From Macrostomum lignano (lineage: Eukaryota), in assembly GCA_002269645.1 (NCBI GenBank), contig NIVC01000536.1, positions 62,001 to 126,000 on the forward strand: a stretch of 64,000 bases of DNA, written 5' to 3'. The notes beneath the pieces were generated by a model that saw nothing but the letters and a program-made list of their open reading frames with translations, had not been told where the DNA came from and ran no database searches. How positions within the stretch are numbered: the first letter of the stretch is position 1; the number at the start of each line of letters is the position of its first letter. This document shows, in pieces, positions 1-23,036 of the stretch. The position numbers were made by a program, and so were the translations under genes.

Positions 1-481
1 TCAGGCATAAACTTATTAGTCTGATGCGCTCTCTGGGCACTCTGGCTATAATGCTTCAAATCCTCAGATCAAACAAGAATCCCACTTCAAAACCAGGCGG
101 GGAGGCTCAATAGTGGAGGTTTTAATTGTTTGCTCAAATCATTTCGCTACGGGAGGGTCAGGCGGGGCAGAGCGGAGATCTGCTTTTGACACCTTTCGTT
201 CACCTCTCTCAGCGTGAGGGCACTGGCGCCAAGTAGGAGGTGAGAAGGTGAGGGCTCGGGAGAGAGTGATTAGTAGATCTCAGCCTCCATCAAATCACGA
301 GCTGCCTCTTACAGCCTCCTTGGAAAATTGACGCGCGCTCTCAAGAACACTCTCCACCCCGGGTGAGCAAATTTTTACTGAAAACGAATATTTAAAGCCA
401 AGACTTCCGACAGCTCAGCTCTGCTTCTGTCTGTGAGACTCAAAAGCGCTCGGCTGTTTGTAACGGATTTTCTTCATCAAG

Positions 482-1424
482 ATGTCGGACGCTGAGGAAC
501 AGGTGCTGCTTGCTGGGCTTGTCGAGGGATCAGCATCTGCTCTGGGAGACTGCAGCGGCGGCGGCAGCGGCTGCTTCATAATGGCGGGATTCAACTCAAG
601 CAGCTCCACTGTGGATGGTGAGTCCCGTGAAACTGGTGTGGTCACTCTCATCCCATCCCGGTTCTCTTGTTCCGTCACTCTCACCCGTCACTCTTACTCG
701 TCACTCTCACCTGTCACTTTCACCCGTCACCCTCGCTCGTCACTCTCACCCGTCACTCTCACCCGTCACTCTCACTCGTCACTCTCACTCCGTCACTCTC
801 ACTCCGTCACTCTCACTCCGTCACTTTCACTCGTCACTCTCATCCGTCACTCTCACTCGTCACTCCCACCCGTCACTCCCACCCATCACTCTCACTCGTC
901 ACTCCCACCCGTAACTCCCACCCGTCACTCTCACCCGTCACTCTCACCCGTCACTCTCACTCGTCACTCCCACCCGTCACTCCCACCCGTCACTCTCACC
1001 CGTCACTCCCACCCGTCACTCTCACTCGTCACACGCCCCCACAGAGTCGAACCCGCTGGAGGAGGTGCCCAAAGAGCGGGCCAGTTTCCGCGAGCGCAAG
1101 CGAATGTTTAGCATCAACTCGGCATTCGAGGAGCTGCGCAGCCACATCCCGACATTTCCGTACGAGAGGCGACTGTCGAAAATCGACACCCTCCGACTGG
1201 CCATCGGCTACATCGCCTTCCTCCGCGATGTGCTGGACTCTGAGTTCTCTAGCCCAGACGAATTCATCCGACACGCCCTTGCACCCAGCCAGCAGTGCCG
1301 CAACTACAGGCAGGCGGAGTGGTTCACCAGCGACCTGCTGGCCCGGCTGGGCTGGCTGCGCTGCCGCAACCTCGGCTGCTGCCCCGACTTTGCCGATATC
1401 GCCACCCTGACTAAGATTGCCTAG
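482..1424 (+). CDS. Fer2: bHLH transcription factor, PTF1/Fer ('48-related') family, Fer2-like; join(482..617,1045..1424)
   Basis: Exon 2 encodes [49 protein letters not shown] plus a C-terminal [12 protein letters not shown] motif that I recall from Fer2-type proteins. Donor G|gtgagt at 617/618 and acceptor ccccacag|AG at 1044/1045 are both phase 1 and join in frame with the 1065..1424 ORF. Subfamily call is from recalled motifs, not a search. Confidence 0.8.
640..1030. repeat. 13-bp minisatellite (cactctcacccgt) filling the bHLH intron
   Basis: Direct inspection. Confidence 0.9.
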
Positions 1425-1439
1425 TTGGTGTGCTGCCGC

Positions 1440-1770
1440 TGGTGTTTGGGAGTGGGGTGGGTGTTGGGAGTTAGGAGGGTGTTGGGTTGGGAGTGAGGTG
1501 GGTGTTGGGAGTGAGGTTGGTGTTGGGAGTGAGGAGGGTGTTGGGTTGGGAGTGAGGTGGGTGTTGGGAGTGAGGTGGGTGATGTGAGTGATGTGAGTGA
1601 GGTGGGTGTTAGGAGTGAGGTGGGTGTTGGGAGTGAGGAGGGTGTTGGGTTGGGAGTGAGGTGGGTGTTGGGAGTGAGGTGGGTGATGTGAGTGATGTGA
1701 GTGAGGTGGGTGTTGGGAGTGAGGTGGGTGTTGGGAGTGAGGTGGGCGTTGGAAATGGGGTGGGTGTTGT
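1440..1770. repeat. 18-bp minisatellite (gtgggtgttgggagtgag)
   Basis: Direct inspection; same unit as 2935..3810. Confidence 0.85.
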
Positions 1771-2084
1771 GCTATCAGTGCTAGTTAGCCTCTAAAATTA
1801 GTAAAGTTTTATCGCGGTAAAACTCAACCTGCTGGCCCATGGAATTGTTAATTTTATAAAAATACAATCTTGATCGTTATTAAAACTTAAAATTTACTTA
1901 CCAGTACTTTCGATGTGTTAACTTTAACTTTCTTCTTGTTTCGATTTATTTGCTTAAACTATACTAGCTTTTACAGACTGGCATTGATCGCTGAGGTTTA
2001 ATCAGTTGATCAGTTTATCAATGACTTTATTGTCCTTCTCCAATGTAAAATTTCAGCCCCCCACCTTGATTCCCTTCAGCCTTT

Positions 2085-2250
2085 CAGATACTCTGCAGGA
2101 TTCCCTTCAGGTACCCTCAATAATTCCCTTCAGGTACCCTCAATAATTCCCTTCAGGTACCTTCAATAATTCCCTTCAGGTACCCTCAATAATTCCCTTC
2201 AGGTACCCTAAATAATTCCCTTCAGGTACCCTCCAGAATTCTCTTCAGAT
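2085..2250. repeat. 23-bp minisatellite (ttcccttcaggtaccctcaataa)
   Basis: Direct inspection. Confidence 0.85.
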
Positions 2251-2346
2251 CCATTGATCTATTTCAGCTGCCTTCTGATCAATTTAAGCTACCCTCCTCA
2301 ATAGTCAACCCAGATCCTTCAGCAAGATTCGAACCCCGGCTCTCAC

Positions 2347-15598
<13,252 letters not shown>

Positions 15599-16807
15599 GA
15601 CACACTTCCGCCGTAGTAAAACGTTGCGTTGGCTTCTCCAAACAAAGGACGGGCTTGGTTTGTTGCTGTTTAGGATTTAGAGATAGCTATGGGAGAGCGG
15701 AGCGGCGAGAGCCGAGTGTATGGGGAGAAGGCGGCGGATGGGACGGGAGGCGGAGCTGCCTCCTCAGCTGTTTAAAATGCGCGCCACTGAGTAAGTAGGG
15801 GGTGGAGGCTGCTGCAGCGGTGCAGGGCGCGGATTGGATTGGAGGGGAGCTTTTTGGGAAACGCAAGGGGAGAGATAGAAGAGATGAAGAATGGCGCGAG
15901 TCTGGCATGATCAGGTCCCGCAATCCATTCTGGTCGTCACTCCTGCCTGCTTTTTGTCAGCGAATTCAGCCTCCCCCAGGTGAAAGCACTGAAATGGATG
16001 GCTGACTGCTTTTCGTCACTCATTCATAGTCACTCCACCATTTTCTCCAGCTGCCTAATTTTCCTGCTCCATCATATTTCAATGCAACTGGCGGGAGCAA
16101 TGCTGATCTAAGGCCAGACTCAGCTTTAGTTGTATTTTTAAAGGCTTTAATTTGAAAGGTAGTGCTCGAATTGAATCTGCAGAGCAATTTCTGTCACTAA
16201 CCGTACTGTTTGTGTCCCGACTGAGCGGTTGATAGTTGAAAAAGCCCATGGCACACCAAACAGCCCTGATAAGCGCTCGCTAAACCATATCTCTGAACAC
16301 GGGCAGCTTGAAGGCTCCGAGGGCCGGTCTGGCCGGGGACACCTTGGATATAAGCATCTGGACGGGAATAGTTTTAAAGCTTCAATTCGACGTATTTTCC
16401 ATTGTCAATTTGTCATTTGTGAGTCTGATTGCAGTTGATCGCCAAGTCTGCAGCAGCTTTGACTTGTGACAAATCCAGAAAATGTAAAATTCGAGCTCGT
16501 AGGCTACAGCCACTGCCTGTCTAACGCCAACCCAGATTCTAAATCTAGATCGCCCTGGCAGTGCTGTCACACACTTGAACTACTACTATCCACTATAGCA
16601 TGCAGCTCGTTCTGATTTCCGGCGATTTATTCGGTCTTATCTGTCTTAGCAGCGCTCCAAGGGCTGTAGCACTGTGGCTGGCCAGGCAAACAAGCAGTTG
16701 GCCTGCATGCCAAGTCACTCTTTCTGCGCATTACTGTTTATTAGGCTAATAGAAGCGAGAAATGCTTTACTTGACAGCAGTTTGTTTTGCTGAAAAATCA
16801 TTTAGCG

Positions 16808-16997
16808 ATGAAGCTCACAGGCAGCGTCGGGAAGCTGTACGAGCTGCGCACGTACCGGATCGCTGCTCAGGATCTGCCGAGGATGCGCAGTCTGGTCCAG
16901 GAGGTGTTCCGAGTTCGCGTCCGACACTCGCGCATCGTTGGCTAGTGGTCTGCCGAGCTGGGCTCTCTGAACCAAGTGTTTCACATCTGGGAGTACG
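16808..16997 (+). pseudogene. NIPSNAP: NIPSNAP-family exon with in-frame TAG
   Basis: Frame from ATG 16808 reads MKLTGSVGKLYELRTYRIAAQDLPRMRSLVQEVFRVRVRHSRIVG*WSAELGSLNQVFHIWEY, then donor G|gtgagg at 16997/16998. YELRTY and G[Y]W..E.G..N.V.HIWEY are NIPSNAP motifs; TAG at 16943..16945 occupies the aromatic (Tyr/Phe) position. No further NIPSNAP exon recognised in the window. Confidence 0.75.
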
Positions 16998-18076
16998 GTG
17001 AGGAGCTCTCATTTTTAGTATAGTCGACTAGCCATCTGCGCCCCCCCAAACGGGGAGGCAAAAAAGAAAGGAATAAAATATTTTGAATAAAATAAAAGTA
17101 CAGTCTGTAGTTAGTTTCTCAAGAAAAATGATGTTAAAAGCATAAAAGCATCAGCCCTGAAAGCCAGCTATCTAAGCCTATCAGATTCTCTATGATCCTT
17201 GACATCAAAGCCTCCCTTTAAGCCATGTTTTACCAATAACTCTCCCTTTTGATGCTTGACCTACCAACAACTCCCAATTGACCCTTCGCATCTCAGCAAC
17301 CCCCCCCCCCCGTGAGCCATGACAATCCCAGCAAGTTTCAAATAAACCTTGACATCTCAGTACTTTCCCCTGTGTCACAGAATTCCATCAATAACCCTCC
17401 ATGAGCCTTGATACGAGCTATCTTAGCGATTCTAAACAAACTTCGCAATGCTTGTGAAAGTTGCAAAGCTTGATATGAAAACTTTGGAAGCAGTTTTTCC
17501 AAAGTACCTGGGGTTCGATTTCGTACGCGGTCAAATAAATTTGACGTTTGAGCTCGAAAATCGGCATGGGGCTTCATTGTGGCCGCTTGATCAAAGCAAC
17601 CGCGTCTCCACAATGACCCACTGCAGGAGGGGGGTTGATTCTGTTAGGAAATTTTTGCTATAGCAAGCTGAGCACCTTCAACTAATTTTGGGTCCATTTA
17701 CTGCCTCTTTTCTTTAATGCGTTTTTGAATTTCTCATATTTCTGTTTATCGGTCTTTGATTCAAAATTCATTTTTTTTCGAAGCAGCAAAACGCAAATCC
17801 CTGCGTCGAGTTTCACTGAATGAAATCGTTTCAGATTCCCTGACGGCGAGAAAGGCTATTCGAGACGCCCTGACACTCGACCAAGATTGGAACAACAAAT
17901 TTCTTAAGCTCGCGTTGCCGGCTTTCGAAAAGCAAGACAACTGCGTTGCCAAGTCGTTGCTAGGTGACATAAAGTCCGTGTGGAACGATCAAGGTGTGTT
18001 CTGATTTGTTTATATCATTTTTTATATTTAGCCTAGTGAGGGGGTTTTAGCTAGTGAAGGGGTTGTTGCCAAGTGA

Positions 18077-18335
18077 GGGGGTTGCAGCCTAGTGGTTAGA
18101 GTGTCGGACTCACGACTTGAAGGTCAGGGGTTCGAATCTCGACCCACTAGGAACAATTTGTGTCCTTGAGCAAGACACTCAACTCTGCATTGCTTCAGTT
18201 CACCCAGCTGTAAAATGGGTGCCAACATTAGCTGGGGTAATTGAGGGTGTGTGGCGACCCCCCCCCCCCCCAGTCCTTGGACTGAACAGCCGTACGCAGC
18301 CTTCAGATGCGCTGCGCAATAACTTTTAAATTTAT
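18077..18335 (+). mobile_element. tRNA-derived CORE-type SINE
   Basis: tRNA-like head with A-box-like GCCTAGTGGTTAG (~18087) and B box GTTCGAATC (18130..18138), followed by GTGTCCTTGAGCAAGACACTCAACTC...CTTCAGTT...CTGTAAAATGGG (~18160..18219), which resembles the MIR/CORE domain (CCTTGGGCAAGTCACTTAAC...CTCAGTT...CTGTAAAATGGG). 3' boundary approximate. Confidence 0.75.
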
Positions 18336-19114
18336 ATATAAAATGCATTGTTAACCGACGAAATGCCACCCGAACTGACTGCAGATTTCTACAAAGTGCT
18401 CACAGTCAACTATCAAGGACTGGCACAGGAGGACGCTAGGAAACGATTTCTTAAATCGGTTCAACATCTGCAACAGCAGGGACCTGATGTGAAGGGCGCT
18501 TTCGAAACTGTTATTGGAAATAGCAGAGAGTGTAAGCATACGGCTGTTGCATGAGATGCTGCTATAACAATGATAACTTGCCTTCTTATCGTGCGTTATA
18601 AACTGTTCCACATTTCCCCAGTCTACGTAATGCAGAGCTCTAACGACCTGGACCAGCTGATTGGTGGCGAAGAGGCTCTGACAGGCGATCCCACCGCTGC
18701 CACCACTTCGAAGGTGCTGAATCCCCTCCAGTGGACTCGGTGGCTGAAGGACTGAAGGCCAATGGATGATGGACGGATAAATTACTATTCACTAGATGAA
18801 AAAGTATCCCCACTAGCATCTAGACATTCCTGATGCTTTCAGCATTGATGCTGTTCAGAGCTTATTAGTAGAAGAGAGAGAGTTATTATTTAGGTCGTTA
18901 CGCTTTAGCCAAATGCGCAATAAATTACGTACAGCTCAACGTAATTTTGGGTATCTTTTTCGATAAGAATGCTGACACTAGACCTGCTGACCATCCGCGT
19001 GCCAGATGTCTTCTCTGTGATTCCACACTACGAATGTGTTGTGGGCGCGGGACGGGAAGAAGGCTCCCTGGATCTCCGCTACCTTGACCCGTAGCCAGTG
19101 GTCAACGTTTCTTA

Positions 19115-19415
19115 GAGCTACAGATGTCACTGCAATGCTACAGATGTCACTGCAATGCTACAGATGTCACTGCAATGCTACAGATGTCACTGCAATGCTA
19201 CAGATGTCACTGCAATGCTACAGATGTCACTGCAATGCTACAGATGTCACTGCAATGCTACAGATTTCACTGCAATGCTACACTTGCTACAGATGTCACT
19301 GCAATGCTACAGATGTCACTGCAATGCTACAGATGTCACTGCAATGCTACAGATGTCACTGAAATGCTACACTTGCTACAGATGTCACTGAAATGCTACA
19401 CTTGCTACAGATGTG
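19115..19415. repeat. 20-bp minisatellite (gctacagatgtcactgcaat)
   Basis: Direct inspection. Confidence 0.9.
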
Positions 19416-19834
19416 ACTGCAATTCCACACAGTCAGTCGGTTGAAGCCAGTCGGAGGAAAGAGATGAAGCCTGCTTTCTAATGCTTTACTCAGACGGCGG
19501 CAACTGCAGCAGATTTCAATCAAAAACAAAAATAGAACGATAACAATTAAAATGATAAAAATTGTGTTTCCTTCATCAAAAAATTGCCGCCAAATTGGAT
19601 TAATCAAACTGATTGCGAGCAGTGCTTATGCAGTTTCAAAAAATGACTCAAGCATAAAAGCATATTTCAATTTTGTTTTTCCAAAATCGAACAGTTACAT
19701 TTTGACTGCACATTGGATTGAACATAACGATTGTTCATTTCATTTAACGAAATAATTACTTTTAAGTTTTCAGCCTCTAAATTGTCTATATTTTCGCCTT
19801 TATGATTTTCGAATATTTTTGAAGCTGGTATGCG

Positions 19835-20575
19835 TTTGGTCTGAGGTGGTATCTCAGTGTGGTACTAGGTTTGGGGTGGTATTTGGTCTGAGGTGGCATC
19901 TCAAGGTGGTATTTGGTCTGAGGTGGCATCTCAAGGTGGTATTTGGTCTGAGGTAGCATCTCAAGGTAGGATTTGGTCTGAGGTGGCATCTCAAGGTGGG
20001 ATTTGGTCTGAGGTGGCATCTCAAGTTGGTATTTGGTCTGAGGTGGCAGCTCAAAGTGGTATTTGGTCTGAGGTGGCAGCTCAAAGTGGTATTTGGTCTG
20101 AGGTGGCATCTCAAGGTGGGATTTGGTCTGAGGTGGCAGCTCAAAGTGGTATTTGGTCTGAGGTGGCATCTCAAGGTGGGATTTGGTCTGAGGTGGCATC
20201 TCAAGGTGGGATTTGGTCTGAGGTGGCAGCTCAAAGTGGTATTTGGTCTGAGGTGGCATCTCAAGGTGGGATTTGGTCTGAGGTGGCATCTCAAGGTGGG
20301 ATTTGGTCTGAGGTGGCATCTCAAGGTGGGATTTGGTCTGAGGTGGCAGCTCAAAGTGTTATTTGGTCTGAGGTGGCATCTCAAGGTGGGATTTGGTCTG
20401 AGGTGGCATCTCAAGGTGAGATTTGGTCTGAGGTGGCATCTCAAGGTGGGATTTGGTCTGAGGTGGCATCTCAAGGTGGGATTTGGTCTGAGGTGGCATC
20501 TCCAGGTGGGATTTGGTCTGAGGTGGCAGCTCAAAGTGGTATTTGGTCTGAGGTGGCAGCTCAAAGTGGTATTTG
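19835..20575. repeat. 30-bp minisatellite (atttggtctgaggtggcatctcaaggtggg)
   Basis: Direct inspection. Confidence 0.95.
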
Positions 20576-20956
20576 GATGTTCAAAAGGTGAGAAATGGTC
20601 CAAAAGGCAGCAAACTGACTATCTAGCTTTAAGACACGAAATTGAAGTTAAAATAGTGAACCTAAGTATTTCTAGTAGTCCTTCTCGCAAACATTTCGAG
20701 TATTCAGTGACGTGAAAAGAAGCCACATTGCCGCATGTAATTGCTTGTCCAACTCTCAGAATTTTAGTCATTTATTTAGAAAAATGTGGCTACTGAAAGT
20801 AGAGTACGAGCGTACTTGTCTCAATTTGGGTGATGCAATCTAAGGATATGACATACCGCATGCATAGATCAGAGAGTTGCTTTTAACAAGCTGCAAGAGC
20901 TAGAACGCCTCTTTCAGCAAGAGTCTGGCGGGAAACAGAATAACGTTGAATGGCCT

Positions 20957-22447
20957 TCATGCCTCAGACAGAGCTCGGGTGAGCTTTGCTGCCAGTCGGA
21001 CCCAGCAGGGCATGCCGCCGCCACTGCCGGGCTGAGGGCAGCCAACCGCTGCCATGCCGGCTGGCCAGACGCGCCAGGCTGCTCGCACCGGAGCCAGGAG
21101 GGCGTGCATCTGCGGCGCGGTCAGCGGGCCGCAGTCGACGTAGCAGGACGCCAGCACGCCGTCAACCAGTAGACTGCCGCTCAGGGTGAACGGTGCGTAG
21201 ATGCCTCGGTGGCTTCTGCTGCTGGCTTGTTGAACACACACAACGAGGTCTCTTCGGAGTCCACCTGGTCCCATCGTCCACAGAGAGGATTGTCCGGCAC
21301 GCAGCTGGCTGGCGGGAGCAGCGCGCGGTGCACAAGCCGCACTCTCTGCCGTCTCGGCCAGAAGCAGCAGGTGCCTGGGGCTCAGCGCGAGGCACGCGCC
21401 AGATTCTGTTCGAATCGACAGCCAGGTTGCGTCCGCCACCTCCGGGTTCCGGTGGCCCCAGGCGTAGACCGGTGAAAATGCCAGGCGGTTACCTGAGCTG
21501 CCCTTCCTGCCAAGCACCAGCTGGCCCAGCCGGAGGTCGCGCAGCTGCACTGGACCATCGGGCGTTACGACTGTGGCGTCGCCAGGGAAGCAGGTGTCAC
21601 CGTTCAAAATGGCGCTATTAGCAACATCAGTTGCAGCTCTCTTCATCGCGGCCTCTTCAATCCGCTGCAGGTCCCGCTCCAGTTCATTCCTTAGTCGAAC
21701 CAGCTCGTCCTTTCCCGCATTCGCCACAAGCCTGTTGAATTCTTCGCGACGCTGCTGCTCTTCGGATTGCAGAGCAGGCCGCAGCTGACGCAGCGCCTCC
21801 TTAGCCTCAGCAAAGTACCGGTTGGTGAAGGTCGCGCCTCTGTTCTGCTGGACCAGACTGTCCATCCTGCTAAGAAGGTGCTCTACGCTTCCATGATTGT
21901 CTACAAGGACAAAGCGATTTCCGCATTGGTTCAGAAGACTGTTTAGGAATTTGGTTGCGTTCCGGGCCTCGTGGATGAGCCTGGCGAACGCTTCTTCGCT
22001 ATTGCCGATGTCATCGCCGTGGCTGAACACCACTATGCAGTGCTTGTAGAAGTCTTCACCGAACATGCGCGTCACAAGTTCCACAGCGGCTCTGTCTTCA
22101 TCAGTGAAGCGACAGTCAACACGGATTATTATTAGAATTACGTGAAACCCCTCGCGACAATGAACTATGGCATTGGCCACCTCATGAAGCGCTCTCTCGC
22201 GGTTATTGGAATCCATTGTACCCGGTGTGTCGACCACGGTCAGCTGTCTTCCTTCCACGGACGCCTCGGCAACCTCGCAGTCGACGCTGGAACTGCAGAA
22301 CGAGTGGTTGACACCGAATGCGTCGAAGTTAGCGGCGGCGGCGCCCTCCTGGCGCCCTCCCGCTCGCAGCAGCGCATTGCCGAGACTGCTCTTGCCGCTG
22401 CCGGTTTTCCCCACGAGAAGAACGTTCAGACTTCTGCGTTCTCGGGC
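20957..22447 (-). CDS. AIG1/GIMAP-family GTPase + coiled coil + Hog domain (Hint autoprocessing + SRR-like tail); main exon
   Basis: Single open exon starting at acceptor ttttag|GCC (22447): LNVLLVGKTGSGKSS (G1), VVDTPG (G3), RVDCRFTDED (GIMAP conserved box), VVFSHGD (G4), CGNRFVLVDN; helical EEQQRREEF...ELERDLQRIEE; then CFPGDATV (Cys at 21590..21592), LRDLRLGQLVL, FSPVYAWGHR, LALSPRHLL, GIYAPFTLSGSLLVDGVLASCY, HALLAPVR. Minus-strand AATAAA at 20771..20776. Confidence 0.92.
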   Translation of the reverse strand, partial: ARERRSLNVLLVGKTGSGKSSLGNALLRAGGRQEGAAAANFDAFGVNHSFCSSSVDCEVAEASVEGRQLTVVDTPGTMDSNNRERALHEVANAIVHCREGFHVILIIIRVDCRFTDEDRAAVELVTRMFGEDFYKHCIVVFSHGDDIGNSEEAFARLIHEARNATKFLNSLLNQCGNRFVLVDNHGSVEHLLSRMDSLVQQNRGATFTNRYFAEAKEALRQLRPALQSEEQQRREEFNRLVANAGKDELVRLRNELERDLQRIEEAAMKRAATDVANSAILNGDTCFPGDATVVTPDGPVQLRDLRLGQLVLGRKGSSGNRLAFSPVYAWGHRNPEVADATWLSIRTESGACLALSPRHLLLLAETAESAACAPRAAPASQLRAGQSSLWTMGPGGLRRDLVVCVQQASSRSHRGIYAPFTLSGSLLVDGVLASCYVDCGPLTAPQMHALLAPVRAAWRVWPAGMAAVGCPQPGSGGGMPCWVRLAAKLTRALSEA

Positions 22448-22997
22448 CTAAAAGTTGATTTAAAGTTGGGTCTAAACAGTGACTCGCCCATCAATTTTCT
22501 GTCAATCGTCTCACACAGTCCTACTGCACAGTACCAAGGAGCGTCATTAAGGATAACTGAGTCTACAGGTTTTGAGACCGAGTCCGAAATTTGACTGACA
22601 AACTGACTGCTGACCCGATAAAAACGGTACCCAGGCCAAGACGTGTCCCAGAGTAGGAAGTAGGAAATAGTTTGACTCTAGACGACTCTAAAACGATGAG
22701 ATCTCACGGTACAAGTCGCCAAAAATTCGTCAAAGAGTCGGGTGTTTTATTGTTTTTGACTCTGAAACGACTCTTACGTGACGTGACGCAAGTGACTCTG
22801 AGACTGTAGAGCTGGATCTGAGGCGTGCTGAAGTCACTACGAGGTAAATAACTGAGTTGCGTCTAAAGCGCATCTGCGTCACTTATCATGAATCATGAAT
22901 TAGAATCGCAATTTACTCTGAGTTAGTAGAAAGTTAAGCGCTAACGCTAGACCTTTGGCCGACTTTCTCACGACTCATTTACGATTCTACAACGTAC

Positions 22998-23036
22998 CGA
23001 TATCCGTTCCTGGTTGCGTCCACCGACTTGAGACAT
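22998..23036 (-). CDS. Candidate first coding exon of the GIMAP-Hog gene (MSQVGGRNQERIS)
   Basis: ATG at 23036, 13 codons, phase-0 donor TCG|gtacgt at 22998/22997 matches the phase-0 acceptor at 22447. The main exon has no ATG before the P-loop, so some upstream exon is required. No homology support for this particular one. Confidence 0.35.

What the first reader, a model, noticed from the sequence alone, without database searches (positions are those of the whole stretch)
20957..22447. GIMAP/AIG1 GTPase fused to a full Hedgehog-type Hog autoprocessing module
Seen: one uninterrupted exon encodes an intact AIG1 G-domain (G1 GKTGSGKS, DTPG, conserved-box RFTDED, FSHGD), a coiled coil, then CFPGDA...LSPRH...GIYAPFTLSGSLLVDGVLASCY and an SRR-like tail (HALLAPVR...GMPCWV). 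There is no signal peptide and no Hedge domain. Established: Hog domains cleave themselves before the Cys, and Hedgehog transfers cholesterol to the new C-terminus; many GIMAPs are membrane-anchored through C-terminal helices. The precedent I recall for IAN-GTPase + Hog is GIN1 of arbuscular mycorrhizal fungi; I do not recall one in animals. Inference: this protein may release a GTPase carrying a covalent C-terminal lipid in place of a transmembrane anchor, i.e. a self-lipidating, cytosolic, immune-type GTPase system.
Basis: partly seen in the sequence, partly recalled or inferred. Interest (0 to 1): 0.92.

Follow-up and report, generated by a model that had tools for sequence, protein, structure and literature searches.

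The report
Flatworm GIMAP-like GTPase with Hedgehog-type self-cleaving tail
This is an intact, selectively maintained gene of the flatworm Macrostomum lignano that fuses an immune-type GTPase to a Hedgehog-style self-cleaving domain. The fusion has already been noted in corals, snails, lancelets and mycorrhizal fungi, but nobody has tested what it does.

Summary
On the minus strand, 20957..22447 is the large second exon of a two-exon gene; exon 1 (23036..22998) supplies 13 residues. The 509-aa product is identical to Macrostomum lignano PAA81348.1. It contains an AIG1/GIMAP G domain (Pfam 1.4e-39), a helical linker and a Hedgehog-type Hint module (1.2e-28) followed by a C-terminal tail. There is no signal peptide, no transmembrane segment and no Hedge domain.

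Four of the five Hedgehog Hint active-site positions are kept: Cys1, S/TxxH and Cys143. The Asp46 general base is replaced by His, and the D46H mutant of Hedgehog is active. The modelled Hint matches Hedgehog Hint at TM 0.89. Two homeologous copies give dN/dS 0.11.

The novelty claim fails. AIG1 plus C-terminal Hint is published for coral, snail, amphioxus and the fungal GIN1. I also found a 38%-identical paralogue and seven mollusc cluster representatives.

The most likely mechanism is self-cleavage at Thr298|Cys299, probably coupled to transfer of a hydrophobic adduct onto the GTPase fragment. This is inferred, not shown. The tail keeps Hog motif J but lacks the Hedgehog HWY sterol motif, so cholesterol cannot be assumed. 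Verdict: a real gene and a new member of a known but uncharacterised architecture.

The parts
22998..23036 (-). Coding exon 1: ATG plus 12 codons (MSQVGGRNQERIS), followed by a gtacgt donor
   Evidence: The spliced product is 100% identical to P0261 / PAA81348.1. The same exon and donor are present in the homeolog L002.
22448..22997 (-). Intron of 550 nt (GT...AG, phase 0)
20957..22447 (-). Coding exon 2: residues 14-509 plus TGA. It encodes AIG1, the linker and Hog without interruption.
21782..22429 (-). AIG1/GIMAP-type G domain (residues 20-235). Motif coordinates: P-loop 22388..22411, DTPG 22220..22231, conserved box RFTDED 22094..22111, SHGD 22013..22024.
   Evidence: Pfam AIG1 at 1.4e-39. 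Alignment to GIMAP7, GIMAP4 and GIMAP2. Foldseek match to GIMAP2 at TM 0.72.
21593..21781 (-). Helical (coiled-coil-like) linker, residues 236-298, ending at the predicted scissile bond after Thr298
   Evidence: AF2 predicts helices at 225-254 and 259-296. The region aligns to the C-terminal helices of GIMAP7 up to residue 281.
21128..21592 (-). Hint module (residues 299-453). Codon coordinates: Cys299 (Cys1) 21590..21592; His345 (position 46) 21452..21454; Ser369-Pro-Arg-His372 (TxxH motif) 21371..21382; Cys448 (Cys143, SCY) 21143..21145.
   Evidence: Pfam Hint at 1.2e-28. Residue mapping onto Drosophila HhC. pLDDT of 83-96. Foldseek matches 1at0 at TM 0.89 with rmsd 2.0, and 6tyy at TM 0.88.
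20960..21127 (-). ARR (adduct-recognition-region-like tail), residues 454-509. It contains motif J H461-A-L-L-A-P-V-R468, a Gly/Pro loop, G-M-P-C-W, and an amphipathic terminal helix at 494-509.
   Evidence: Alignments A1 and A2. H461, L464, P466, R468 and P493 are invariant across flatworm and mollusc AIG1-Hog proteins. Helices predicted. Hydrophobic moment of 0.69.

Best explanation
The gene encodes a cytosolic precursor. It consists of an N-terminal GIMAP/AIG1-type GTPase with a helical extension (residues 1-298, about 33 kDa) joined to a C-terminal Hog autoprocessing domain (Hint plus ARR, residues 299-509, about 22 kDa).

By analogy with Hedgehog, the proposed chemistry has three steps:
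1. Cys299 attacks the Thr298 carbonyl in an N-to-S acyl shift, assisted by Ser369 and His372.
2. The acyl group may pass through Cys448.
3. The thioester is resolved by a nucleophile positioned by the ARR and activated by His345.

This releases the GTPase fragment. Most probably the fragment carries an ester-linked hydrophobic adduct (a sterol or another lipid alcohol) at its new C-terminus, which would tether it to the cytosolic face of a membrane in place of the tail anchor used by several GIMAPs. The Hog fragment is discarded.

Shown: the architecture, intact catalytic residues, the fold, purifying selection, and membership of a conserved AIG1-Hog family. Inferred: the cleavage itself, the identity or even existence of the adduct, the membrane targeting, and any immune role.
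For: - Both domains score far above the Pfam thresholds, and they sit on one uninterrupted exon.
- Four of the five Hedgehog Hint active-site positions are kept. The fifth, Asp46, is His. D46H Hedgehog still autoprocesses in cells (PMC12054796). In vitro it keeps activity with a wider sterol range (PMC8529194 and PMC9163320).
- The AF2 Hint model has pLDDT 83-96 and superposes on 1AT0 and 6TYY at TM 0.88-0.89 with rmsd about 2 A.
- In a 38%-identical paralogue and seven mollusc AIG1-Hog proteins, C1, H46, H72, the SCY cysteine and the ARR residues H..L.P.R and P(x)W are invariant. The [ST] of [ST]xxH is kept by inspection of that alignment. Conservation of the ARR, and not just the Hint, argues that the second (transfer) step matters.
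- Two homeologs differ by 12 synonymous and 4 nonsynonymous changes. dN/dS is 0.11 (p=3.8e-5), and 0.15 within Hog. Divergence across the roughly 4-kb aligned region, coding sequence included, is about 4%.
- The terminal helix is strongly amphipathic and basic, like a membrane-interface helix.
- There is no signal peptide or TM segment, so any membrane attachment must come from elsewhere.
- The same hypothesis fits GmGIN1, which aligns colinearly.
Against: - No experiment on any AIG1-Hog protein was found.
- The Hedgehog SRR motif K (HWY), implicated in cholesterol contact (PMC9163320), is replaced by P-x-W. Sterol specificity is therefore not supported by sequence.
- Hedgehog processing occurs in the ER lumen at a membrane. 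Here the reaction would be cytosolic, where millimolar glutathione could simply resolve the thioester without lipid transfer.
- The residue before the Cys is Thr, not the Gly conserved in Hedgehog. It is variable across the family.
- Transcription and splicing were not verified directly.
- The AIG1 part of the model has only moderate confidence (pLDDT about 60-75).
Confidence: 0.5

Rival explanations
1. Self-cleavage only. The Hog domain cuts at Thr298|Cys299 and the thioester is resolved by water or a small thiol. This releases an unmodified GTPase, either as a maturation or activation step or to shed an autoinhibitory or localising C-terminal domain. No lipid is attached.
For: - The catalytic set for thioester formation is intact.
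- The HWY sterol motif is absent.
- Cytosolic thiols are abundant (established knowledge).
- Burglin 2008 notes that it is unclear whether non-Hedgehog Hog domains add cholesterol, hence the name ARR.
Against: - The ARR (motif J, the P-x-W motif and the amphipathic helix) is conserved across flatworm and mollusc proteins and lies under purifying selection. This is unnecessary for mere thioester formation.
- The position-46 base needed for the transfer step is invariant as His in the AIG1-Hog set.
Confidence: 0.25
2. The Hog domain acts as a ligand-triggered switch or sensor. The C-terminal Hog takes the place that sensor domains occupy in NLR-like immune NTPases. Arrival of a particular sterol or lipid, for example of microbial or dietary origin, triggers cleavage and thereby activates or relocates the GTPase.
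For: - Related proteins carry N-terminal effector or adaptor modules. Amphioxus has CARD (PMC12373286). Snail AIG-family proteins carry death domains, though not shown in the same proteins as the Hint. Haliotis and Potamilus have a stonustoxin-like MACPF.
- A His at position 46 broadens sterol tolerance in Hedgehog.
Against: This is purely architectural reasoning. The window protein has no effector domain, only 19 residues before the G domain. There are no data on inducibility.
Confidence: 0.1
3. The Hint is catalytically dead or used only as a structural or interaction domain, and the protein functions uncleaved.
For: There are two departures from Hedgehog: Thr to Ser in TxxH and Asp to His at position 46. 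Thr rather than Gly precedes the Cys.
Against: Both substitutions are conservative or experimentally tolerated. C1, H72 and C143 are invariant across about 30-40% identical relatives. A dead enzyme would not be expected to keep all nucleophiles.
Confidence: 0.1
4. The fusion is an artefact: an assembly or annotation error, or contaminant DNA.
For: None found. The window is highly repetitive, which can cause misassemblies in general.
Against: - Both domains lie in a single uninterrupted ORF.
- The same gene occurs on other contigs of the assembly at 99% identity, with the same intron.
- A 38% paralogue on another contig has the same architecture.
- Mollusc proteins share the architecture.
- The gene has a GT-AG intron and sits inside a 346-kb M. 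lignano contig.
Confidence: 0.02

Closest known systems
[quoted passage not shown]
   Same: - It has a colinear AIG1-like GTPase plus a bona fide Hog domain and no signal peptide.
- BLASTP alignment to the window protein is end to end, at E=8e-32 and 25% identity.
- It also has His at position 46 (LMIHADP), TPKH, SCY and an L-V-P-L-R motif J.
   Different: - It is fungal and has a much shorter linker (about 30 residues against about 60).
- In my NJ tree the GIN1 Hog does not group with the flatworm and mollusc Hogs, though support is below 50% either way.
- Common origin versus convergent fusion is unresolved. Its function is also untested.
Animal AIG1 + C-terminal Hint proteins already reported: Acropora millepora (PMC3723955), Biomphalaria glabrata (PMC7053062), Branchiostoma CARD+AIG1+HINT (PMC12373286). 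Also the mollusc proteins found here: Haliotis XP_046325551/XP_071114325/XP_046377533, Potamilus KAK3590788/KAK3597702, Physella XP_059156493.
   Same: - They share the domain order.
- The mollusc proteins share the invariant residues C1, H46, H72, SCY, HxLLxPxR and P-x-W.
- In NJ trees of both the Hog and the AIG1 domains, they place next to the flatworm pair, with weak support.
   Different: - The flatworm protein is the minimal form of 509 aa.
- Many relatives add N-terminal modules: stonustoxin-like MACPF, CARD, or long coiled coils (P0169 is 1416 aa).
- The coral and amphioxus sequences could not be obtained for direct comparison.
Hedgehog C-terminal autoprocessing domain (HhC; PDB 1AT0, 6TYY)
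   Same: It shares the Hint fold (TM 0.89), Cys1, the xxH motif, Cys143 in SCY, motif J, and a helix-loop-helix tail.
   Different: - There is no Hedge signalling domain and no signal peptide, so processing would be cytosolic.
- Position 46 is His, not Asp. TxxH is SxxH. The HWY motif is replaced by P-x-W. Thr rather than Gly precedes Cys1.
- Hedgehog Hog domains form a separate clade with 86% bootstrap.
Vertebrate GIMAPs (GIMAP7 3ZJC, GIMAP2 2XTM, GIMAP5 6Z3E)
   Same: It shares the AIG1 G domain with G1, G3 and G4-like motifs and the conserved box. The Arg aligned to GIMAP7 Arg103 is present. A C-terminal helical extension follows the G domain.
   Different: Vertebrate GIMAPs end in a tail anchor or a soluble helix, never a Hint. 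Sequence identity is only about 27-33%. Invertebrate AIG1 domains, including this one, cluster apart from vertebrate GIMAPs with 71% bootstrap.

Membership tests
AIG1/GIMAP (IAN) GTPases | AIG1 domain profile above the curated threshold | tested here: met
   PF04548 at 136.1 bits against a cutoff of 27, E=1.4e-39, covering 208 of 212 profile positions
AIG1/GIMAP (IAN) GTPases | G motifs plus the GIMAP conserved box between G3 and G4 | tested here: met
   GKTGSGKS, DTPG, box IIIRVDCRFTDEDR and SHGD align to the corresponding GIMAP7, GIMAP4 and GIMAP2 motifs
AIG1/GIMAP (IAN) GTPases | GTP binding and hydrolysis; role in immunity or cell survival | not testable with these tools
   This needs biochemistry or genetics.
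Hog domain (Hint + ARR/SRR) proteins | Hedgehog-type Hint profile and fold | tested here: met
   PF01079 at 100.6 bits against a cutoff of 29.7. Foldseek matches 1at0 at TM 0.89 with rmsd 2.0.
Hog domain (Hint + ARR/SRR) proteins | Catalytic Cys1, TxxH and Cys143 (SCY) | tested here: met
   Cys299, Ser369-x-x-His372 (Thr to Ser) and Cys448 align to Drosophila C1, T69/H72 and C143
Hog domain (Hint + ARR/SRR) proteins | General base Asp46 | tested here: not met
   The position is His345. His is invariant in the nine AIG1-Hog proteins of the A1 alignment, and by inspection it is also present in GmGIN1 and in the moss and protist Hogs examined. The D46H mutant of Hedgehog is active, so this is a variant and not a loss.
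Hog domain (Hint + ARR/SRR) proteins | C-terminal SRR/ARR with motifs J and K | tested here: inconclusive
   Motif J (H-A-L-L-A-P-V-R) is present and conserved. At the motif K position, Hedgehog HWY is replaced by P-C-W. Helix-loop-helix is predicted.
Hog domain (Hint + ARR/SRR) proteins | Autoproteolysis and adduct transfer | not testable with these tools
   This needs expression, mutants and mass spectrometry.
Hedgehog proteins proper | N-terminal Hedge signalling domain and secretory signal peptide | tested here: not met
   No PF01085 hit. The N-terminus is hydrophilic and there is no TM segment. Its Hog lies outside the Hedgehog clade.
Inteins | C-terminal splice junction (terminal Asn plus a downstream nucleophile) and a C-extein | tested here: not met
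   The protein ends 56 residues after the Hint with the ARR, and no C-extein follows. Protein splicing, as suggested for the coral proteins in PMC3723955, is not expected.
AIG1-Hog fusion proteins (GIN1 type) | Colinear AIG1 + Hog in one polypeptide without a signal peptide | tested here: met
   plus the paralogue and mollusc members
AIG1-Hog fusion proteins (GIN1 type) | Common descent of the fusion (both halves co-cluster) | tested here: inconclusive
   The flatworm pair has 90% bootstrap on Hog and, with P0206, 95% on AIG1. It places beside the mollusc AIG1-Hogs in both NJ trees, but the joining nodes have under 50% support. GmGIN1 is not joined on the Hog tree.

The most novel reading that the evidence does not exclude
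AIG1-Hog proteins would be a second, cytosolic class of autocatalytically sterol- or lipid-esterified proteins, spread across corals, spiralians, lancelets and glomeromycete fungi. The Hog domain would covalently plant an immune-type GTPase on a membrane, or would fire in response to a particular sterol. In relatives, that GTPase is coupled to CARD or to a stonustoxin-like pore-forming domain. The M. lignano gene would be the minimal version, in a flatworm reported to be amenable to transgenesis (my own knowledge).
Probability: 0.3. Interest if true: 0.8.

Novelty: new member of a known kind. Interest (0 to 1): 0.4.

Why it matters
The Hedgehog literature treats covalent cholesterol ligation as essentially unique to Hedgehog ligands. 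[quoted passage not shown]

A conserved family in which a full Hog domain, with its base and tail intact, is fused to a cytosolic GTPase suggests that the same chemistry is used elsewhere, for a different purpose and in a different compartment. If that holds, three things follow:
- It would reveal a new way of anchoring or activating GIMAP-like GTPases, whose own mechanism is still unclear.
- It would define the natural substrate range of His46-type Hog domains.
- It would give an ancestral context for how Hedgehog processing arose.

This gene adds Platyhelminthes to the distribution. It offers a compact 509-aa, nearly intronless representative for a direct test. It does not establish a new architecture.

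Tried and rejected
- **Word-indexed Hog-only searches.** The aim was to list every AIG1+Hint protein with names. The first was cut too hard by my 1e-10 threshold. The second was swamped by Hedgehog proteins after I added Drosophila HhC. Neither gave an architecture census. The census therefore rests on the top 150 of 9032 HMMER hits and on the literature.
- **Coral AIG1-Hint sequences.** I looked in the supplements of PMC3723955. Only domain E-values are held there.
- **Literature on this gene.** A search for Mlig016153 and Mlig029920 found nothing. Searches for functional work on GIN1 or on cytosolic Hog proteins found nothing relevant. PMC8857920 does not mention Hint.
- **Other copies in the window.** tblastn found only this one. 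Almost all other long ORFs lie in tandem repeats.
- **Hedgehog orthologue or Hedgehog-derived Hog.** Rejected. There is no Hedge domain, and Hedgehog Hogs form a separate clade with 86% support.
- **Intein or protein splicing.** Rejected because there is no C-extein.
- **Fusion artefact.** Rejected on the single ORF, the homeologs and the paralogue.
- **Limits of the trees.** The NJ trees are shallow analyses (BLOSUM62 distances, 100-200 bootstraps). They should not be read as resolving deep relationships.
Full report
**What is there**

On the minus strand, 20957..22447 is a single open frame of 496 codons ending in TGA. It starts immediately after a ttttag acceptor. A tblastn with the annotated protein located a 39-nt first exon at 23036..22998. 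It encodes MSQVGGRNQERIS and is followed by a gtacgt donor. Splicing the two exons gives a 509-aa protein that is 100% identical to PAA81348.1, BOX15_Mlig016153g3 of Macrostomum lignano. The window comes from contig NIVC01000536.1 of assembly GCA_002269645.1. No in-frame ATG precedes the P-loop in exon 2, so exon 1 is needed for a complete G domain.

**Domains**

Pfam finds two domains far above threshold:
- AIG1, at E=1.4e-39, covering residues 20-235 of the full protein.
- The Hedgehog-type Hint module PF01079, at E=1.2e-28, covering residues 290-453.

No Hedge domain is hit. Against PDB sequences, the N-terminal half matches GIMAP7, GIMAP4, GIMAP2, GIMAP5 and GIMAP1. The match extends through the helical extension of GIMAP7. 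The C-terminal half matches Sonic hedgehog and Drosophila Hedgehog Hint.

G1 (GKTGSGKS), G3 (DTPG), the GIMAP conserved box (RFTDED) and the G4-like SHGD all align to their GIMAP counterparts. The N-terminus is hydrophilic and no 19-residue window reaches transmembrane hydrophobicity. The protein should therefore be cytosolic.

An AlphaFold2 model has mean pLDDT 69. The Hint module scores 83-96, and two long helices span 225-296. The model superposes on Hedgehog Hint 1AT0 and 6TYY at TM 0.88-0.89 with rmsd about 2 A, and on GIMAP2 at TM 0.72.

**Catalytic inventory**

HMMER and MAFFT alignments to Drosophila HhC map the Hedgehog Hint active-site positions as follows:

| Hedgehog Hint position | Window protein |
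|---|---|
| Cys1 | Cys299 |
| Asp46 | His345 |
| Thr69 | Ser369 |
| His72 | His372 |
| Cys143 (SCY) | Cys448 |

These are the five residues listed as the Hint active site in PMC12054796. The only non-conservative change is Asp46 to His.
- The D46H mutant of Hedgehog still autoprocesses in cells.
- Its structure is almost unchanged (6TYY).
- It accepts a wider range of sterols.
- His is the state in every AIG1-Hog protein I examined, in GmGIN1, and in the moss and protist Hog domains examined.

After the Hint comes a 56-residue tail. It contains Hog motif J (HALLAPVR), a Gly/Pro-rich loop, GMPCW, and a strongly amphipathic basic helix with hydrophobic moment 0.69. At the motif K position, the Hedgehog HWY motif, which is implicated in cholesterol contact, is replaced by P-x-W. 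The tail is thus an ARR in Burglin's sense. It is not demonstrably a sterol-recognition region.

**Is the gene real and maintained?**

A homeologous copy (P0001) lies on contig NIVC01000263.1, and a second contig also carries P0001. The NIVC01000263.1 copy has the same exon 1, intron boundaries and length. Its coding sequence differs at 16 of 1530 nt, which amounts to 12 synonymous and 4 nonsynonymous changes by Nei-Gojobori. Divergence across the roughly 4-kb aligned region, coding sequence included, is about 4%.

| Region | dN/dS |
|---|---|
| Whole coding sequence | 0.11 (binomial p=3.8e-5) |
| G domain | 0 |
| Hog | 0.15 |

A second M. lignano gene, Mlig029920 (P0002), is only 38% identical but has the same AIG1 + Hint architecture. 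In that paralogue an intron lies exactly in front of the Hog-coding exon. In the window gene both domains share one exon. An assembly or annotation artefact is therefore excluded for practical purposes.

**Distribution**

An exhaustive HMMER search of 1.84 billion cluster representatives returned 9032 hits. Among the top 150, seven further representatives carry both domains. They come from Haliotis cracherodii, Haliotis rufescens, Potamilus streckersoni and Physella acuta, plus one from a cluster that includes Bradybaena similaris.

Aligning their Hog domains with the two flatworm ones gives 23 invariant positions. These include Cys1, His46, His72, the SCY cysteine, H..L.P.R of motif J, and the Pro of P-x-W.

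In NJ trees the two flatworm proteins pair. Support is 90% on Hog; on AIG1 it is 95%, in a group that also includes the AIG1-only protein P0206. The pair sits beside the mollusc AIG1-Hogs for both domains, but the joining nodes lack support. Hedgehog Hogs form their own clade at 86%.

**Literature**

The fused architecture is not new.
- GmGIN1 of Glomus mosseae was recognised as AIG1-like GTPase plus bona fide Hog without a signal peptide (Burglin 2008, PMC2362128). Its sequence, taken from that paper's Additional file 9, aligns colinearly with the window protein at E=8e-32.
- In animals, Weiss et al. 2013 reported four Acropora AIG1 proteins with a C-terminal Hint (PMC3723955).
- Lu et al. 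[quoted passage not shown]
- A 2025 amphioxus pangenome paper describes CARD+AIG1+HINT as a recurrent architecture also present in a few fungi (PMC12373286).

I found no paper that tests cleavage or lipidation of any of these proteins, and none that mentions the M. lignano genes.

**Mechanism**

The best-supported reading is a self-processing precursor. An N-to-S acyl shift occurs at Thr298|Cys299, and the thioester is then resolved with release of a roughly 33-kDa GTPase and a roughly 22-kDa Hog fragment. I put cleavage itself at about 0.75.

Whether a lipid is transferred is less certain. Three observations favour it:
- the tail is conserved across phyla;
- the position-46 base, which is needed only for the transfer step, is conserved;
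- the terminal helix is amphipathic.

Three observations count against it:
- the HWY motif is missing;
- the reaction would occur in a thiol-rich cytosol;
- there are no data of any kind.

I therefore give 0.5 to cleavage with a hydrophobic adduct, 0.25 to cleavage only, about 0.1 to a ligand-triggered sensor role, about 0.1 to a non-catalytic Hint, and 0.02 to an artefact. Protein splicing, as suggested for the coral proteins, is not expected because there is no C-extein.

**Verdict**

It is the same inference that fits GIN1. This is a new flatworm member of a known but functionally uncharacterised AIG1-Hog family. Its value is as a compact, intact, selectively maintained representative with which the cytosolic Hog hypothesis could be tested.

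Noticed in passing
window 1..64000; e.g. 13268-15276, 46458-48096, 50228-52099, 19875-20576, 23506-24144: The window is dominated by dozens of unrelated minisatellite and tandem arrays (72 TRF rows). Examples are a 9-mer x226, (CTAT) x410 and a 23-mer x82. The gene sits between a 30-mer array about 380 bp past its stop and an 11-mer array about 470 bp upstream of its ATG. Nearly all other long ORFs in the window fall inside such arrays.
   Followed up: partly
P0199 (Haliotis cracherodii XP_071114325) residues 12-276; P0158 (Potamilus streckersoni KAK3597702): The long mollusc AIG1-Hog proteins carry an N-terminal stonustoxin-like MACPF (pore-forming) domain. Stonustoxin alpha (PDB 4wvm_A) matches at E=4.9e-6, and Pfam MACPF scores 20.8 bits, just under the 21.5 cutoff. 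The architecture is therefore MACPF + AIG1 + Hog, which I did not find described in the papers I read.
   Followed up: partly
L003 (NIVC01000184.1) 3001-6293, paralogue Mlig029920: The 38%-identical paralogue has at least three coding exons. One intron lies at about residues 291-293, exactly in front of the Hog domain. In the window gene, AIG1 and Hog are on one exon. This hints at exon-level modularity or intron loss.
   Followed up: partly
P0206 (UniRef A0A1I8GAU7, M. lignano, 307 aa): M. lignano also encodes an AIG1-only protein. It is 45% identical to the window G domain and groups with it at 90% bootstrap. It ends in a Cys-rich tail (...CPCCKVPW...) instead of a Hog domain. This may be an alternative anchoring solution (acylation?), or the model may be truncated.
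   Followed up: no
L001 vs L002 (window gene vs homeolog on NIVC01000263.1): Two of the four amino-acid differences between the homeologs fall next to catalytic residues: CFPG versus CFPS at position 302, and SPRH versus SPGH at position 371, inside the TxxH motif. The catalytic residues themselves are unchanged.
   Followed up: partly
literature (PMC12373286 vs PMC3723955 / PMC7053062): [quoted passage not shown] For AIG1 plus C-terminal Hint, this overlooks the earlier coral and snail reports and the mollusc and flatworm proteins found here.
   Followed up: yes
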